Shown piece by piece: positions 1-7,327 of a stretch of DNA of 7,527 nucleotides. The DNA lies in the IMG/VR virus record IMGVR_UViG_3300005859_000117, positions 1-7,527 of that record; one strand, written 5' to 3'. Every line of letters begins with the position of its first letter. Positions within the stretch are counted from its first letter, which is position 1. The notes below the pieces were generated by a model. The model did no database searches. It was not told where the DNA came from and saw only the letters and a list, made by a program, of their open reading frames with translations. The position numbers were made by a program, and so were the translations under genes.

Positions 1-243
1 ATTTAATGAAAAATATAGTTTTTAATTTGTTGATTCAATAGGTTATGGTTCTGATGTTGATATTAATTTCTATTATAATAAGGAATTAAATATTGGAATA
101 AATGCTTTGTTTAAAGATGGAGATATTATTGTATTTTCAATATTGTATTTTTGTTGTTGGTTTTAATGATGGAAACTTTAAGAGAAATAGATAAATTTGT
201 CAAAAGAGAAAAAGAATTAGGAGGAGGAAAAAATGTTTCTTGA
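1..243 (+). pseudogene. Possible frameshifted or degraded 3' part of an upstream gene
   Basis: Frame 2 reads FNEKYSF*(TAA 23-25)FVDSIGYGSDVDINFYYNKELNIGINALFKDGDIIVFSILYF. One extra T in the T5 run at 148-152 joins it to frame 1, LLLVLMMETLREIDKFVKREKELGGGKNVS* (TGA 241-243), which overlaps the SD and ATG of the next gene as coupled genes do. Inference only. Confidence 0.3.
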
Positions 244-544
244 TGATAATGATGATATACTTGGAGATATAATAATTAGAAAGTATAAAGATAATTTTGA
301 AATTGTATTTACGAAAAGTTACAAATGTTTTATTTCAGATTTTCAAGAAAAATATTGTATTGTTGAGCATATAGATAAAGATAAAGATTTTGATGTTTAT
401 TTGATTCCTTATGAAGAGCTTAATGTCAAAAATATAGATGAATTATTTCTATTATTAATCAAGGAGCCTAGAAAAATTATAAAAATATTAACTGAAAATG
501 ATATACCGATTTATAGGCTTATTATAGAGTACTACAAAAATTAA
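233..544 (+). CDS. Hypothetical small acidic viral protein (103 aa)
   Basis: ATG preceded by strong SD GGAGGAGG (220-227) and followed by a T-rich tract. About 22 D/E versus 15 K/R. No family recognised. Confidence 0.8.
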   Translation: MFLDDNDDILGDIIIRKYKDNFEIVFTKSYKCFISDFQEKYCIVEHIDKDKDFDVYLIPYEELNVKNIDELFLLLIKEPRKIIKILTENDIPIYRLIIEYYKN

Positions 545-628: not shown

Positions 629-1111
629 ATGAGTGAAAATAAAGATCAGATTAAAAAAATAAATGAGATAATTGAAAAATTAGAAAATTTGAAGCAAGAG
701 ATAGCCGAGTTGCAACAACAAATGGAAGCTCAAAAATATGAAAGTGATGTAAAGAATTTGTTTAAAATGATAAAAAAGATAACAAATGAGGAATTTAATT
801 CTGTATTTTATGTTGAAGGTGACAAAGTAAAGTATATAGCTAATCATGAAAGAATATCTGGATTTCCTAATTTAATTGTCTATTGTGATAAATCATCTTG
901 TAAAATGTATTGTTATCGATTTTATACAGTTGAAAATCATTTAATTAAAGTTAAATATTATGCAGAATATGATGTTCCAGATGATATAATTAGTATTTTG
1001 AAAAAATTGCCAGAAACTCCGAAAATTGATGAGTGTGCCACAGATTCAATTTTTAAATTGTATTGTTTACTAAAACAAGGTTATTCAATAAGTTTCATTA
1101 AGGAAAATTGA
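629..1111 (+). CDS. Hypothetical protein (160 aa) with N-terminal coiled coil
   Basis: Own promoter and terminator. Heptad pattern in IKKINEIIEKLENLKQEIAELQQQM. Five Cys in the C-terminal half. No family recognised. Confidence 0.85.
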   Translation: MSENKDQIKKINEIIEKLENLKQEIAELQQQMEAQKYESDVKNLFKMIKKITNEEFNSVFYVEGDKVKYIANHERISGFPNLIVYCDKSSCKMYCYRFYTVENHLIKVKYYAEYDVPDDIISILKKLPETPKIDECATDSIFKLYCLLKQGYSISFIKEN

Positions 1112-1159
1112 TTTTTTCTTCTGTTTTTGTTCTCTATTTTTCTCATAAAAAAATAGAGA
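1112..1159 (+). terminator. Oligo-T terminator followed by an 11-bp perfect inverted repeat
   Basis: T tracts from 1112, then TCTCTATTTTT (1131-1141), a 7-nt loop and AAAAATAGAGA (1149-1159). Confidence 0.55.
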
Positions 1160-1178
1160 TTTAGAGAGATAGAAGTTG

Positions 1179-1223
1179 AGAGAAAGATTTAAAAATGAGT
1201 TTAGACATAGATTATTTCGGTGA
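1179..1223 (+). promoter_or_regulatory. Strong BRE-TATA promoter plus SD
   Basis: Purine-rich BRE (AGAGAAAGA), TTTAAAAA (1188-1195) and archaeal SD GGTGA (1219-1223) 7 nt before ATG 1231. Confidence 0.7.
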
Positions 1224-1230
1224 TAGGAGA

Positions 1231-1617
1231 ATGAGTAAAGAAGATAAGTTAAATCAATTTCTAGATTTGACTCAATTAAATATTGAGGAAAGGCGTGAAC
1301 TAATCATGAAGGCGATAAAGGAAGGGAAGGAGGAAGCAAAATACATACTAATGCTCACAGAATATGATAGACCAGGACCGAGCTTTACAGATAGAGCAAC
1401 AATCAAGATATTGTACGGAGAAGTAGAAAGAGTTCTAATGAACAGAGTTTATAGCTATCCTACGACGGACGAATATTTATACGCGTTGATTCCGAAAACT
1501 AGAACTGTTGTTTTGTTGTACAAATCTGCAAGTGATTATGAAGGAGAACTAGAGAAACATGAAAAGCTATTTGTGTTTAGTTATCCTGAAGGTTGGAAGT
1601 CAATCTCTTTATATTAA
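1231..1617 (+). CDS. Hypothetical viral protein (128 aa), probable early gene; start revised from 1195
   Basis: ATG 1195 overlaps the TATA box, whereas ATG 1231 has a GGTGA SD. The motifs EYDRPGPSFTDRA and YSYPTTDEYLYALIPKT resemble, from memory, ~130-aa terminal-region proteins of rudiviruses (unverified). Confidence 0.85.
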   Translation: MSKEDKLNQFLDLTQLNIEERRELIMKAIKEGKEEAKYILMLTEYDRPGPSFTDRATIKILYGEVERVLMNRVYSYPTTDEYLYALIPKTRTVVLLYKSASDYEGELEKHEKLFVFSYPEGWKSISLY

Positions 1618-1773
1618 TTTAATTCTTTTTTTATTTTGCTCTAATTTCTTAGCTTTCTAGTTTTTCTATTTTTAATTTTTTAGCTTCATGTCTAGTTTTT
1701 TTCATAGCTAAAATGTAATTTTATTTGAAAGTTGAGAAAAATTAGATATAAAAAAATGGGTTAGATTTGAATT
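1618..1773. terminator. Convergent terminator region
   Basis: Several T5-T7 tracts on the + strand (1626-1702). A7 at 1750-1756 is a T7 on the - strand just downstream of the stop at 1774. Confidence 0.6.
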
Positions 1774-2133
1774 TCAGAGATAAACACTTAGCAGATATTG
1801 TCTATTATTAGTTGCAAATATATCAATTTCGCTTGCGTTCTTTTCAACTGTAATTTCTATATCTTTCATTAGTGTTTGTTTTCCGAATTGCAGAACTATC
1901 TTTAATGTGTATTTATTGTCTTGAATTACAAAAGCTATATTGAATGCAAAAACTTTCTTGTGAATTATTGTAAATCCTTTAATTGATAGTAGTCCGCGGT
2001 TTAAAGCTATGATTGGAGGCATTTCTTCTAGTTCAAAAGTAGATGTTAAGAGTTCGGAGATTTGTTGCTTTGTTATCTTTTGAACTACTTGTCTAACGTT
2101 TTCCTTCCAATCTTCTATTTTCTTAGGTTCCAT
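1774..2133 (-). CDS. Hypothetical protein (119 aa from ATG 2133; 122 aa if GTG 2142 is used)
   Basis: Long ORF directly downstream of the Cas4-like gene. TATA-like TTTTAATA lies about 35 nt upstream, with an SD-like GTGAG before the ATG. C-terminal half looks beta-rich. No family recognised. Confidence 0.8.
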   Translation of the reverse strand: MEPKKIEDWKENVRQVVQKITKQQISELLTSTFELEEMPPIIALNRGLLSIKGFTIIHKKVFAFNIAFVIQDNKYTLKIVLQFGKQTLMKDIEITVEKNASEIDIFATNNRQYLLSVYL

Positions 2134-2179
2134 TTTTCTCACACTTATATTTTAGAGATTTAGATATTAAAAGTTTTCT

Positions 2180-2803
2180 CTAGAACAATTTTCCATAGCA
2201 GTAGTTTATAAATTCGCAATTTGTGCAAAATTTGTTATTTAAGCCTGGTACTTTTTTATAATCGGTTTGACTTAAATATTCCTTCAATTTCTTTATCCAA
2301 TCAATTGCTTTCTTAACGTAAACCTCTAGTAGTACATCATCAATTCTTAATTGTTTGACTTCTTTAGTTGTCCTATTTAGATAAATGATGTATACATTAT
2401 CAATTTTGTAATTTTGTTTTTTGAGCAAGTAGTAGTAAATTGCAACTTGATAAAGATGATATTCTTTAACTTGAAAAATTTCATGACTTATAGTTTTTAG
2501 TTCAATAAGGTCGTTTCCACAAATTAAATCAATTCTTGCGGAGATTTTCATTCCTTCAATTTCATCATTTATTACGACTTCATTTTTACAATTTAATTTT
2601 TCAACTAGATAGTTCTCTATATGCTCATGATATTGTATTCCTAAGTCCATGTAAAATTCATTAATTTTCTTCTGGAATGTTGTTTTTCTGCTTAAGTAAC
2701 TTCTCCTGAAGCAAATTCCGATTTCACTCGGGAAAATTGTATCTTCTGGATATTTTACATTAAAACTTTCCTTAATTATATCTTCATAATTCATAGTTAT
2801 CAC
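2180..2803 (-). CDS. cas4: Cas4-like RecB/PD-(D/E)xK nuclease with Fe-S cysteines (SIRV2 gp19/ORF207-like)
   Basis: Motifs PSEIGIC, Gxxx[21 protein letters not shown] and C-terminal CxxCxxxxxC. GTGA overlap with the ATPase stop (alternative ATG at 2794). Gene order matches gp17-18-19. Confidence 0.93.
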
Positions 2804-4116
2804 GCTGATAAATTGAAATATCTCATTAATAATGATATCTGTTTACAAATTTCTTCATTTTGTCTTTGCCCAATTCCAATATCAATTCCGAGAGCTTGCA
2901 GTAAAATCTGAATATCTATAGCTTGTTCTTGTCTCCTAGATTGTAAATTTTCGCAATTTATATAATTTGTAGTTTTGTTAATTTTGTCTTGAATTAGTTC
3001 AACTAGAGCCTTCAAAATTGACGGATATAGAACTCTTGCATTTATAATTTGGTCGTAAGTTTTTTTGAGTGCAATTTGAATAATATGAATTCTATCAAGA
3101 ATTGCTGGAGTAAATATTTCGTAATTTACTAAATAGTCCTCTACATCCGGAGTTGAGAGTCTATTGATCGTATACGAGTAGGGATTCCCGGCGTAAATTA
3201 TCGGCAAGCACTTCTGTATGATTGCAGATTTTGATTCTGTACCACTTCCTCTAGTCCAAATGCAATTTTCAATTCCAGTACTTAGAGTTGAATTTATAGC
3301 GTTCAAATTATTTTTTGAAAGGTTATCTTTCCAAGTTTGGATTTCATCAAAAATTAGTCCGTTAGACAAAAACACTGCCCCGTACATATTATTTCTTGCA
3401 TCGTAAACTAAATTTGCATAAGTTGGTGCTTCAGTGTAGTATCTGAAATTAAATACTTCTTGTAATATCATAAATGTTGTAGTTTTTCCGGTTCCTCTAT
3501 TTGAAATTTCAATATAATTAATTTGTCTTTTTGTAATCGGAGATTTGAAGAGTGGAAATAGTCTCGGTAAGAAGAGGAAAATGTCATTTACGTCCATTTT
3601 TGTTGGGTCATATCCGAATGCTTGCAGTAAGAGAGCGTAAAGCTGGTGTTCTGCATCTGCTTCTTCAAATAATTCTTTTGCAATTTCATAATTATTCGGT
3701 GGTTCAATTGAATAAATGTCGTAAATGTACCAACTATCTGTACCTTTCCTAATTTTGACAAGCATATATGAAGATATCAAGTTGTAGAAATCTTCAGGGT
3801 TGTCAGCAATAAGGTGGGGGTCGAATTCTCCGGCAAAGCCGTTTTGAAATCTTGCTAACACACTGTCATTTTTTACTTTAAAGTTAGTAATCTTTGAGAT
3901 AAATTTTACTTCATCATTAAATAATAGATAGCTTTGAAAATATTGATTATCAATTCCGCGTTTGTAAGCTTTAAAAATTTCAATTCTTTTCCTTTCTTCA
4001 ACTTTTTTCTCTCCTAAGATAATGTTGAGTATTCGCTCTGTGTCACGGGGATTATAATAAAAAGAATGTGCTATCTCTTTCTGGAGAAAAGAAGGCTTAT
4101 TTTCAATTTGAGACAT
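2800..4116 (-). CDS. AAA+ ATPase, putative helicase (SIRV2 gp18/ORF436-like; BrxL/MCM-related)
   Basis: Walker [10 protein letters not shown], Walker B LIFDE, sensor-1-like IIYAGN and Arg finger AILDR. 438 aa, between the SSB and Cas4-like genes. Confidence 0.92.
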
Positions 4117-4135
4117 GAAAAAAAAGTTACAATTT

Positions 4136-4147
4136 GACTTTTTTAAA
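4136..4147 (-). promoter_or_regulatory. TATA+GTC internal promoter for the ATPase gene
   Basis: Minus strand TTTAAAAAAGTC, 19 nt from ATG 4116, overlapping the SSB stop codon. Confidence 0.55.
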
Positions 4148-4529
4148 ACTCATCTTCTACGTTCTTTTTCTGTTGTTTTTTAGACTGTTGATGTTGCTCT
4201 TCTTCTATGTCAAGTTCCTCTTCTTGTACTCCGTTGCTATTCCTTCCAGTAAATTTAACGTATTCATTCAGCAAATCTCTATATTTATCCAGAAATTCGT
4301 AGATTATCTTAAAATCTTCCGCATCATTAGCAGTTATCCCTATCTGTTTCCTAAAATTATTAGCTGAGTGGATTGTCATTGAATATCTTACAGAATTTCC
4401 GTTCGGTACCGCATTCAGTTGAACAACTAGTCTTTTTGTTCCTTTAATTTTTAGCACTCTTGAAACTGGCTTATTACTTTGCTTTGCTTGACTTCCTAAC
4501 TGATCTATTATTTCTTTTAAGGACGCCAT
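4143..4529 (-). CDS. Single-stranded DNA-binding protein (SIRV2 gp17/ORF131b-like), 128 aa; start revised from 4553
   Basis: MASLKEIIDQLG...LKIKGTKRLVVQLNAVP...RYSMTIHSANNFRKQIGIT closely matches gp17 as I recall it. Acidic, probably disordered tail ending VEDEF. The track's TTG start lies inside the promoter. Confidence 0.92.
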   Translation of the reverse strand: MASLKEIIDQLGSQAKQSNKPVSRVLKIKGTKRLVVQLNAVPNGNSVRYSMTIHSANNFRKQIGITANDAEDFKIIYEFLDKYRDLLNEYVKFTGRNSNGVQEEELDIEEEQHQQSKKQQKKNVEDEF

Positions 4530-4548
4530 TAAGATAGATAAAAAGTTT

Positions 4549-4560
4549 GACAAATATAAA
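4549..4560 (-). promoter_or_regulatory. TATA+GTC promoter of SSB (leaderless)
   Basis: Minus strand TTTATATTTGTC, 19 nt from ATG 4529. Confidence 0.75.
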
Positions 4561-6895: not shown

Positions 6896-6907
6896 TATTT
6901 ATTTGTC
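6896..6907 (+). promoter_or_regulatory. TATA-like + GTC promoter of the svtR-like gene
   Basis: TATTTATTTGTC, 28 nt before ATG 6936. Confidence 0.55.
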
Positions 6908-6935
6908 AATATCACTTTTTAAAAATTGAGAGAAA

Positions 6936-7297: not shown

Positions 7298-7315
7298 AAT
7301 TCAAAAGCTTGAGTT

Positions 7316-7327
7316 GACAAATTTAAG
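7316..7327 (-). promoter_or_regulatory. TATA+GTC promoter (leaderless)
   Basis: Minus strand CTTAAATTTGTC, 18 nt from ATG 7297. Confidence 0.65.

What the first reader, a model, noticed from the sequence alone, without database searches (positions are those of the whole stretch)
1179..1617. 128-aa gene under an early anti-defence-type promoter
Seen: AGAGAAAGA-TTTAAAAA-TGAGTTTAGACATAGATTATTTC-GGTGA-N7-ATG, the most canonical BRE/TATA/SD set in the window, lacking GTC. Established: a conserved strong early promoter marks anti-defence genes in SIRV2-like viruses. That this promoter belongs to that class is my recollection and is unverified. It is the best anti-defence candidate in the window.
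Basis: partly seen in the sequence, partly recalled or inferred. Interest (0 to 1): 0.6.

Follow-up and report, generated by a model that had tools for sequence, protein, structure and literature searches.

The report
Early-promoter anti-defence candidate gene, rudivirus
A 128-residue gene in a hot-spring rudivirus fragment sits behind the same conserved early promoter that drives the known anti-CRISPR genes of SIRV2-type viruses, and it belongs to a published but untested candidate anti-defence family (ADG.05).

Summary

**Promoter.** Window 1148-1233 aligns without gaps to 20 early "anti-defence gene" (ADG) regulatory sequences of SIRV2, SIRV1-XX, SIRV9 and SIRV10. These include aca8, acrID1 and acrIIIB1. 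A weight matrix built from those 20 scores the window site at 55.7 bits. True members score 58 +/- 11 when left out. The next best window site scores -3.8 and the best of 500 random sequences 2.5.

**Protein.** The gene is 1231-1617 and encodes 128 aa. The 140-aa call starts inside the TATA box. The product is 38-55% identical to the members of cluster ADG.05 of Bhoobalan-Chitty et al. 2024. In that paper all 11 homologues carry the motif and none was tested. All six IMG/VR homologues found here carry the promoter too.

**Fold and family.** The model is N-terminal helices plus a seven-strand beta meander, with no convincing solved relative and no catalytic-looking conserved residues. A profile search enlarges the family to 129 clusters. 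At least five members fuse the domain to a ribbon-helix-helix (RHH) DNA-binding domain behind a palindromic operator.

**Function.** The most likely role is an early protein that binds and blocks a host immune component. That role is unproven.

**Verdict.** New member of a known, predicted kind.

The parts
1148..1187 (+). Purine-rich upstream half of the conserved ADG regulatory sequence (AGAGAGATAGAAG...), ending in the BRE-like AGAGAAAGA at 1179-1187
   Evidence: It aligns without gaps to 20 SIRV early promoters, lies within the PWM hit at 1153-1223, and is conserved in the homologous loci L014-L019.
1188..1195 (+). TATA box TTTAAAAA. The published consensus is TTTAWATA, so there is one mismatch.
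   Evidence: consensus quoted from PMC11065993. The start of the box lies 43 nt before the ATG, the same spacing as in SIRV2 aca8, gp02 and gp03.
1196..1218 (+). Conserved segment between the TATA box and the Shine-Dalgarno sequence (GAGTTTAGACATAGA...). It probably contains the transcription start, expected near 1216-1220, and may be the operator for an Aca8-type repressor. Both points are inferences.
   Evidence: The columns are conserved across SIRV ADG promoters and across homologous loci. The operator role is the paper's hypothesis and was not tested here.
1219..1223 (+). Shine-Dalgarno-like GGTGA, 7 nt before the ATG
   Evidence: The same GGTGA sits in the same register in most of the training promoters.
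1231..1617 (+). Coding sequence of 128 aa plus stop codon; a member of family ADG.05 / phrog_10536. The alternative ATG at 1195 (140 aa) lies inside the TATA box and is not the real start.
   Evidence: Homologues start at MSKE(E/D), and in L014 an in-frame stop codon rules out the extension. AF2 model pLDDT 85.7. dN is 0.18-0.23 with dS saturated, which points to purifying selection.
1618..1650 (+). T-rich tract after the stop codon, a probable archaeal oligo-T terminator shared with the convergent gene that ends at 1774 (inference only)
   Evidence: Sequence reading. Not tested.

Best explanation
The window is a terminal-arm fragment of an uncultured SIRV-like rudivirus from a hot spring.

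The gene at 1231-1617 is a single-gene unit. It is driven by the Aca8-type early regulatory sequence: a purine-rich BRE and TATA box that make a very strong TFB/TBP promoter, virus-class-specific flanks, a short leader and a Shine-Dalgarno sequence.

The gene is therefore expected to be transcribed immediately after infection. It would then be shut off by an Aca8-like repressor encoded elsewhere in the genome.

The product is a 15-kDa, mildly acidic protein with no cysteine. It has N-terminal helices and a seven-strand antiparallel beta meander, and it belongs to cluster ADG.05.

It most likely acts without catalysis, by binding and blocking a host immune component. A CRISPR-Cas effector is the obvious class of target in Sulfolobales.

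Shown here: promoter class membership, family membership, conservation of the promoter upstream of homologues, and the predicted fold.

Inferred: early timing, repression by Aca8, and the anti-defence activity and its target.
For: Promoter:
- It aligns without gaps and in register with aca8, acrID1, acrIIIB1 and 17 other SIRV early promoters.
- The PWM score is 55.7 bits. Left-out true members score 58.2 +/- 10.7, the next window site -3.8 and the null maximum 2.5.

Family:
- tblastn gives E 2e-41 to SIRV isolates V3, V60 and V65, 2e-33 to SIRV1-XX ORF134b, and 1e-15 to 1e-20 to SIRV5-10 gp01/gp49. The phrog_10536 match has E 1e-31.
- These proteins form ADG.05 in PMC11065993. Its motif prevalence is 11 of 11, as high as Aca8's, and AcrNET calls the family an Acr.

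Conservation of the promoter:
- All six IMG/VR homologues carry the promoter directly upstream, scoring 25.8-65.8 bits.
- Against L016, the promoter segment differs at only a handful of positions in the alignment, while the coding sequence is 68% identical. This is the pattern the paper describes.

Evolution:
- The gene is much more diverged than the core genes. Its dN is 0.18-0.23, against 0.02-0.07 for the Cas4-like, ATPase, o230 and o188 genes.

Protein:
- The broad-family alignment conserves only G, P, W and L residues, so there is no catalytic signature. The window protein has pI 5.3, no Cys and one His.
- Distant members fuse the domain to an RHH domain behind a palindromic operator that brackets the TATA box. 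This is the architecture of self-regulating Aca-Acr fusions.
- In contig L028 the fusion gene lies inside a cluster of small single genes that share their own conserved regulatory sequence.
Against: - No member of ADG.05 has been tested, and DeepAcr scores the family 0.
- No transcript data exist for this virus.
- No aca8 homologue is present in the window or in five related contigs of up to 16.9 kb. This is weak evidence, because in SIRV5, SIRV6 and SIRV7 ADG.05 is gp01 and aca8 is gp50-53, at the other end of the genome.
- The paper's own criterion, a motif shared among several genes of the same genome, cannot be met in this fragment, which holds only one copy.
- An early promoter marks early genes, not necessarily anti-defence genes.
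- The fold gives no functional hint. The best VIA Z-score is 5.4 and Foldseek finds nothing in the PDB at E <= 0.001.
- One distant member, in L027, sits inside a co-directional operon rather than behind its own promoter.
Confidence: 0.6

Rival explanations
1. It is an early host-takeover or regulatory protein that does not target immunity. For example, it could modulate host replication, the cell cycle or transcription. The promoter would then only report early timing.
For: - The promoter class defines early genes. Within SIRV2, only aca8, acrID1 and acrIIIB1 of the 11 early genes that share this sequence are characterised.
- The core BRE and TATA box also occur at strong host promoters (Supplementary Data 2 description).
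- The protein has no similarity to any known Acr or defence-related family.
- In this clade the gene lies immediately next to the conserved replication-associated block of Cas4-like nuclease, ATPase and gp17-like protein.
Against: - Motif prevalence of 1.0 and a terminal, variable genome position match the behaviour of the characterised Acr genes.
- Divergence is high relative to core genes.
- The family is patchy among rudiviruses. tblastn at E <= 1 lists no SIRV2 record, which is not expected for a core takeover function.
Confidence: 0.22
2. It is a viral antitoxin mimic. The helix-plus-beta domain would be the toxin-neutralising part of an RHH-type type II antitoxin, and the stand-alone viral copy would neutralise a host abortive-infection toxin, as shown for ADG.17/Phd.
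For: - At least five family members have an N-terminal CopG-type RHH domain (PF01402, E 1e-7 to 1e-9).
- In the model of P0053 that N-terminal domain superposes on the MazE, TacA, ParD and KacA antitoxins at about 2 A.
- In L030-L032 the fusion gene overlaps a small downstream ORF.
- There is a precedent for a viral antitoxin among ADGs.
Against: - The downstream ORFs of L030 and L031 are unrelated to each other and have no Pfam match.
- L028 and L033 have no co-directional downstream partner.
- The genome-contig scan (one genome per species) found no convincing cellular homologue beside a toxin. The only hit is a virus-like pair of MAG contigs.
- The window protein itself has no RHH domain and no adjacent toxin-like gene.
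Confidence: 0.08
3. The domain is an oligomerisation or ligand-sensing module of transcription regulators. The stand-alone protein would then be a co-regulator or anti-repressor of the early gene programme, with no host target.
For: - The RHH fusions and their conserved palindromic operators around their own TATA boxes show that the domain works alongside DNA-binding regulators in some lineages.
- One member, P0021, is a tandem duplication of the domain.
Against: - About 95% of the family (the great majority of 122 representatives scanned) have no DNA-binding domain.
- The window protein's N-terminus is an acidic, low-confidence tail rather than a DNA-binding fold.
- Self-regulating Acr-Aca fusions explain the same architecture (established knowledge, for example AcrIIA1 and AcrIF24).
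Confidence: 0.08
4. It is not a real gene, or the real product is the 140-aa ORF that starts at 1195.
For: Some gene callers chose the 140-aa start (P0001, P0003, P0005, P0008 and P0011).
Against: - The ATG at 1195 lies inside the TATA box.
- Most homologues start at the conserved MSKE, and L014 has an in-frame stop codon just upstream.
- The apparently conserved N-terminal extension is simply the translated promoter.
- The family has 129 clusters, and the model is confident.
Confidence: 0.02

Closest known systems
ADG.05 cluster of predicted anti-defence genes (Bhoobalan-Chitty et al., Nat Commun 2024, PMC11065993). Members include SIRV isolates V3/V60, SIRV1-XX ORF134b, SIRV5-10 gp01/gp03/gp49, ARV2 gp39 and AFV7 gp14.
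   Same: - Homologous over the full length: 38-55% identity to the rudiviral members.
- Same length class.
- Same single-gene layout near a genome end.
- Same regulatory sequence directly upstream.
   Different: - It comes from an uncultured clade whose core genes are about 75% identical at nucleotide level to SIRV4-10.
- The gene abuts the conserved Cas4-like/ATPase block, rather than being separated from it by a multi-gene ADG cluster (compare SIRV9).
- It is the only gene with this promoter on the arm, in contigs of up to 16.9 kb.
- The function of the family is untested.
SIRV2 early regulatory sequence of aca8 (gp01/54), acrID1 (gp03) and acrIIIB1 (gp48)
   Same: - Purine-rich BRE, TATA box, conserved upstream AGAGAGATA-type segment, conserved segment after the TATA box, and GGTGA.
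- Identical 43-nt spacing from TATA box to ATG.
- A PWM score within the member range.
   Different: - The TATA box is TTTAAAAA, not TTTAWATA.
- The segment after the TATA box (GAGTTTAGACATAGA) differs in detail from SIRV2's (TAGTTTATGCATATG).
- No aca8 was found in the fragment.
- Early timing is not measured.
Self-regulating Acr-Aca fusion proteins of phages (for example AcrIIA1 and AcrIF24; from general knowledge, not tested here)
   Same: Distant ADG.05 members join a DNA-binding domain (RHH) to the ADG.05 domain, and they sit behind a palindrome that brackets their own TATA box.
   Different: - The window protein has no DNA-binding domain.
- The DNA-binding fold is RHH, not HTH.
- Neither autoregulation nor Acr activity has been shown for any member.
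RHH-type type II antitoxins (MazE, ParD, TacA, KacA)
   Same: The N-terminal domain of the fused members superposes on these antitoxins (Z 5.5-6.4, rmsd about 2 A over 51-54 residues). The order of domains, RHH first and effector domain second, is the same.
   Different: - The C-terminal part is a roughly 100-residue folded beta domain, not a short toxin-wrapping tail.
- There is no conserved toxin neighbour.
- The window protein lacks the RHH domain.

Membership tests
Aca8-type early ADG regulatory sequence (PMC11065993) | Strong core promoter: a purine-rich BRE directly upstream of a TTTAWATA-type TATA box | tested here: met
   AGAGAAAGA at 1179-1187 and TTTAAAAA at 1188-1195, with one mismatch to the TATA consensus.
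Aca8-type early ADG regulatory sequence (PMC11065993) | Similarity of the flanks around the core promoter to the consensus of other ADG promoters | tested here: met
   A cross-genome PWM from 20 SIRV promoters scores the site at 55.7 bits. Left-out members score 38-81, the next window site -3.8 and the null maximum 2.5.
Aca8-type early ADG regulatory sequence (PMC11065993) | The motif is shared by several genes of the same viral genome (the paper's virus-specific MEME/RSAT criterion) | tested here: inconclusive
   Only one copy is present in the 7.5-kb window and in each related fragment of up to 16.9 kb. The record is estimated about 24% complete, so the other arm is unseen.
Aca8-type early ADG regulatory sequence (PMC11065993) | A single gene, not part of an operon | tested here: met
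   There are 119 nt of non-coding DNA upstream of the ATG, after the previous gene's stop codon at 1111. The next gene is convergent.
Aca8-type early ADG regulatory sequence (PMC11065993) | Transcription immediately after infection | not testable with these tools
   No RNA run holds this sequence. The only holder is one DNA metagenome.
Aca8-type early ADG regulatory sequence (PMC11065993) | aca8 present in the same genome | tested here: inconclusive
   tblastn with three Aca8 proteins finds nothing below E 0.04 in the window or in five related contigs. In SIRV5, SIRV6 and SIRV7, aca8 lies at the opposite genome end from ADG.05.
ADG.05 protein cluster / phrog_10536 | Significant sequence similarity to cluster members (the paper used PSI-BLAST at E <= 0.001) | tested here: met
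   tblastn E values are 2e-41 (V60), 2e-33 (CAG38864.1 region) and 7e-20 (SIRV10 gp49). The phrog_10536 match has E 1.3e-31 over 111 of 117 profile positions. Foldseek matches the BFVD models of SIRV10, AFV7 and ARV2 members at E 4e-10 to 2e-7.
Characterised archaeal Acrs (AcrID1, AcrIIIB1, AcrIII-1/DUF1874, AcrIA3) | Sequence or fold similarity to a characterised Acr | tested here: not met
   - tblastn at E <= 1 finds no match in SIRV2, which encodes AcrID1, AcrIIIB1, AcrIII-1 (gp37) and gp47/AcrIA3.
- The paper lists AcrIIIB2 as a cluster separate from ADG.05; no AcrIIIB2 sequence was compared here.
- There are no Pfam or PADLOC hits.
- No PDB match by sequence or fold.
RHH-type type II antitoxin | An N-terminal RHH DNA-binding domain and an adjacent cognate toxin gene | tested here: not met
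   The window protein has no RHH domain and its neighbours are not toxin-like. Even in the RHH-fused relatives, the downstream ORFs are not conserved.

The most novel reading that the evidence does not exclude
The ADG.05 helix-plus-beta-meander domain could be a previously unrecognised inhibitor fold used widely by archaeal viruses, well beyond Sulfolobales rudiviruses. The family has 129 clusters at 50% identity, and the contigs fetched range from 24 to 49% GC.

Its RHH-fused forms could be the first archaeal self-repressing Aca-Acr fusions. Their conserved palindromic operator (GTACGGA, TATA box, TCCGTAC) could then serve as a new bait for regulatory-sequence or guilt-by-association discovery of anti-defence genes in uncultured archaeal viruses.
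Probability: 0.3. Interest if true: 0.6.

Novelty: new member of a known kind. Interest (0 to 1): 0.4.

Why it matters
Very few archaeal anti-defence proteins have been characterised. ADG.05 has the most consistent promoter association of the large predicted families (11 of 11 homologues, and 7 more here including the window), yet it has no known activity or target.

The window shows a rudivirus clade in which ADG.05 is the only gene with this promoter on its genome arm. That makes it a clean candidate for testing.

The enlarged family, a confident structural model and the RHH-fused, apparently self-regulated relatives supply concrete reagents and hypotheses for finding what the protein inhibits.

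As a discovery it is incremental. Both the promoter principle and the family were published in 2024.

Tried and rejected
- **Family scans.** Pfam and PADLOC scans of the protein gave nothing. A PDB sequence profile search gave only E >= 0.057 noise.
- **Fold searches.** Foldseek against the PDB found no match at E <= 0.001. VIA wide gave a best Z of 5.4 on the window's model and again about 5 for the beta domain of the better P0053 model; both are below the tool's stated noise level of 7-8. The ESM Atlas structure search gave TM <= 0.46 (DsbD-N and chagasin-like Ig sandwiches). The Atlas feature search scored 0.80, at noise level. The recurring weak chagasin/EhICP2 resemblance was considered and rejected as generic beta-sandwich similarity.
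- **Literature.** A search for 'ADG.05' found no follow-up paper.
- **Expression.** The only sequencing run holding the region is a DNA metagenome. Read laying was therefore not run, and expression stays untested.
- **Aca8.** Searches of the window and five related contigs were negative but uninformative.
- **Toxin-antitoxin reading of the RHH fusions.** The downstream ORFs are not conserved.
- **dN/dS.** The ratio could not be computed because synonymous sites are saturated. Only dN and the contrast with neighbouring genes are reported.
- **Repeats.** The repeat search found no terminal inverted repeat or other structure bearing on the finding.
- **Not run.** Complex prediction was not used, because no specific binding partner is claimed.

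Full report
**What the window is.** The 7527-base window is a whole IMG/VR virus record, classed as linear and estimated about 24% complete. It is AT-rich, 21-34% GC. Region 2209-4529 is about 75% identical at nucleotide level to SIRV4-10 and SIRV2. That region encodes homologues of the rudiviral gp17-like protein (PF21017), a BrxL-like ATPase and a Cas4-like nuclease. The window is therefore one arm of an uncultured SIRV-like rudivirus. The only public run holding the region is a hot-springs DNA metagenome.

**The observation.**
- AGAGAAAGA at 1179-1187
- TTTAAAAA at 1188-1195
- a 23-nt spacer without GTC at 1196-1218
- GGTGA at 1219-1223, then seven bases
- ATG at 1231 and the stop codon at 1615-1617

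The ORF listing reports a 140-aa ORF from an ATG at 1195, but that ATG lies inside the TATA box. Most homologues begin at the conserved MSKE(E/D). In locus L014 an in-frame stop codon lies directly before that methionine. The 128-aa reading is therefore correct, and the 'conserved' 12-residue extension seen in some database entries is simply the translated promoter.

In SIRV2, aca8, acrID1, acrIIIB1 and eight further early genes share a regulatory sequence built around a strong BRE and TATA box. That sequence was used to predict anti-defence genes (ADGs).

I extracted the upstream regions of annotated genes from the termini of SIRV2, SIRV1 variant XX, SIRV9 and SIRV10. Twenty of them align to each other and to window 1148-1233 without a single gap. 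The 43-nt distance from the start of the TATA box to the ATG is the same.

A 71-column weight matrix built from those twenty, with none from the window, gave the following scores:

| Sequence scored | Score (bits) |
|---|---|
| Window 1153-1223 (+) | 55.7 |
| True members, each left out in turn | mean 58.2, sd 10.7, range 38.2-81.0 |
| acrIIIB1, left out | 38.2 |
| Next best site in the window, either strand | -3.8 |
| Maxima of 500 Markov-1 randomisations | mean -22.9, highest 2.5 |

One caveat applies: some training promoters are near-duplicates, which inflates their left-out scores.

The other genes of the window use a different promoter type containing ATTTGTCA next to the TATA box. It occurs five times against 0.69 expected. 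The same type precedes SIRV2 gp04, gp06, gp10, gp12, gp46 and gp51.

**What the protein is.**
- Pfam and PADLOC find nothing.
- PHROGs places it in phrog_10536, of unknown function, at E 1e-31.
- tblastn against phage records finds 55% identity to unannotated ORFs of SIRV isolates V3, V60 and V65, 49.5% to SIRV1-XX ORF134b, and 38-42% to gp01/gp49 of SIRV5-10. Weak matches fall in ARV2 and AFV7. No SIRV2 record is listed.
- These are exactly the members of cluster ADG.05 in Supplementary Data 1 of the paper. That cluster has 11 homologues, all 11 with the motif. AcrNET calls it an Acr and DeepAcr does not.
- The paper tested SIFV2 gp15 and SMV1 gp44, not ADG.05. A text search for 'ADG.05' finds no later work.

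The family is a published prediction without experimental support, and the window adds a new member.

**Relatives and context.** A word-based protein search finds 17 metagenomic relatives. IMG/VR holds six loci. In every one, the same weight matrix finds the promoter directly upstream of the homologue, at 25.8 to 65.8 bits.

Three contigs form the window's own clade, with aligned segments 82-88% identical at nucleotide level: L022, L025 and L026. Their gene order is conserved: the ADG.05 gene, a convergent 122-aa gene, the Cas4-like nuclease, the ATPase and the gp17-like gene. In this clade the ADG.05 gene is the only gene with the promoter, even on a 16.9-kb contig. Two more SIRV-like contigs carry five and four copies.

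No aca8 homologue is present on any of these fragments. However, in SIRV5, SIRV6 and SIRV7, ADG.05 is gp01 and aca8 is gp50-53. The repressor gene may simply lie on the missing arm.

**Evolution.** The table compares the window with its three closest contigs.

| Gene(s) | Nucleotide identity | dN | dS |
|---|---|---|---|
| Cas4-like, ATPase, o230, o188 | 85-91% | 0.02-0.07 | 0.46-0.96 |
| ADG.05 gene | 68-70% | 0.18-0.23 | saturated |
| Convergent neighbour o122 | 63-65% | 0.37-0.39 | 1.1-1.5 |

By contrast, the promoter segment differs from that of L016 at only a handful of positions. A conserved regulatory sequence in front of a fast-diverging or exchanged coding sequence is the pattern described for ADGs. 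The low dN relative to saturated dS shows that the protein is under purifying selection.

**Structure.** AlphaFold2 with the 17-sequence alignment gives pLDDT 85.7 and pTM 0.76. The model has a disordered acidic tail at residues 1-9, helices up to residue 38, and seven sequential antiparallel strands at 40-126.
- Foldseek finds no PDB match at E <= 0.001.
- In BFVD it finds only the family's own members plus AFV2 ORF119.
- The exhaustive VIA search peaks at Z 5.4, below the tool's stated noise level.
- The ESM Atlas gives TM <= 0.46.

The protein has pI 5.3, no cysteine and one histidine. Across the broad family, only glycine, proline, tryptophan and leucine positions are nearly invariant. Nothing suggests catalysis. 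This is why I favour a stoichiometric binder.

**A larger family, with fusions.** The family scans left the function open, so I ran the exhaustive profile search. It found 129 clusters at E <= 1e-3 and 64 at <= 1e-10. Almost all are stand-alone proteins of 100-160 residues from metagenomes.

At least five members (P0053, P0057, P0074, P0080 and P0115) carry an N-terminal CopG-type RHH domain, with PF01402 E values of 1e-7 to 1e-9. BLASTP of the window protein against P0053 gives E 8e-14 over the full length.

A model of P0053 has pLDDT 94.6. It shows RHH helices followed by the same seven-strand meander. Its N-terminal domain superposes on RHH antitoxins and regulators at about 2 A, while its beta domain again has no convincing solved relative. 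P0021 is a tandem duplication of the domain.

The fusion genes lie on four different contig types of 38-49% GC. All sit behind the same promoter architecture: an inverted repeat GTACGGA / TCCGTAC bracketing the TATA box, with further half-sites nearby. This looks like an autoregulatory operator.

In L028 the fusion gene lies among small single genes that share their own roughly 60-nt regulatory sequence. That resembles an ADG cluster in a different virus lineage.

The ORFs downstream of the fusions are not conserved. I therefore do not read the fusions as toxin-antitoxin pairs.

One distant member, in L027, lies inside a co-directional operon. A homologue is split across two virus-like contigs of a MAG labelled Archaeoglobales.

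**Interpretation.** These points are shown:
- The promoter is a member of the SIRV early ADG class.
- The protein is a member of ADG.05.
- The promoter travels with the gene in every rudiviral homologue examined.
- The gene is real and diverges fast.
- The fold has no close solved relative.

These points are inferred:
- immediate-early transcription
- later repression by an Aca8-type protein
- a non-enzymatic anti-defence role

I put about 0.6 on the anti-defence reading. About 0.2 goes to an early takeover or regulatory role unrelated to immunity. Small weights go to an antitoxin mimic or a co-regulator.

**Novelty.** This is a new member of a known, predicted kind, so interest is moderate. 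The added value lies in four things: quantitative confirmation of the promoter, the clade in which ADG.05 is the only such gene on its arm, the much larger family, and the RHH-fused, apparently self-regulated relatives.

Noticed in passing
window 195-202, 589-596, 6901-6908 (+); 4548-4555, 7315-7322 (-): A second promoter class is present. ATTTGTCA lies next to the TATA box, 18-33 nt before the start codons of four genes (starts at 233, 629, 6936 and 7297); the fifth copy overlaps the called start of the gp17-like gene. It occurs 5 times against 0.69 expected. The same type precedes SIRV2 gp04, gp06, gp10, gp12, gp46 and gp51.
   Followed up: partly
window 4529-4553 (-): The listed TTG start of the gp17-like ORF (4553) overlaps its own ATTTGTCA promoter element, and the Pfam PF21017 match starts at residue 10. 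The real start is probably the ATG near 4529.
   Followed up: no
window 1774-2142 (-): The convergent 122-aa gene (phrog_28348) is the most diverged gene of the arm. It is 48-54% identical in amino acids to the three closest contigs, while flanking core genes are 87-97% identical. Its function is unknown, and it forms a variable hot spot together with the ADG.05 gene.
   Followed up: partly
L008 647-1078 (-) (= IMGVR_UViG_3300017469_000039): In one close relative, a 143-aa dual-specificity phosphatase gene is inserted between the o160 homologue and the ADG.05 promoter (PF00782, E 6e-9, HCxxxxxR motif). It is absent from the window.
   Followed up: partly
L010 993-1238 (+); L009/L014 134-379: In the 16.9-kb relative, the gene directly upstream of the ADG.05 homologue is an 81-aa protein with no Pfam match, in place of the window's o160. 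So the region upstream of the promoter is variable among close relatives.
   Followed up: no
L028 2420-4480; L030 25-49; L031 204-228; L033 238-262: RHH-ADG.05 fusion genes share a conserved inverted repeat, GTACGGA / TCCGTAC, around their TATA box on four contig types. In L028, four neighbouring small genes share a different conserved regulatory sequence of about 60 nt containing CACAAAA...GTTTTGT.
   Followed up: partly
P0021 (232 aa, ENA contig of 1441 bp): A family member that consists of two tandem copies of the ADG.05 domain.
   Followed up: no
L020 3977-4288 and L021 3-197 (QMZE01000050.1 / QMZE01000023.1): A 33-36% identical homologue is split across the ends of two contigs of a Guaymas MAG labelled Archaeoglobales. 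The neighbours are a glycosyltransferase, a LAGLIDADG endonuclease and large unknown proteins. This is probably a viral or mobile element binned with the MAG.
   Followed up: partly
L027 3831-4241 (JGI 3300041912 contig, 28,986 bp, GC 24%): A distant family member (P0047) lies 11 nt after the preceding gene in a long co-directional gene array, so it has no promoter of its own. An identical-cluster member is labelled a Nanopusillaceae MAG.
   Followed up: no
window 629-1111 (+) and 233-544 (+): The two genes upstream of the finding have homologues only in SIRV-type viruses: o160 matches phrog_12890 and SIRV9 gp08, and o103 matches only SIRV isolate V3. Both use the ATTTGTCA promoter type. The o160 homologue checked (SIRV9 gp08) is not listed as an ADG in the paper's supplement; o103 has no annotated homologue to look up.
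   Followed up: partly
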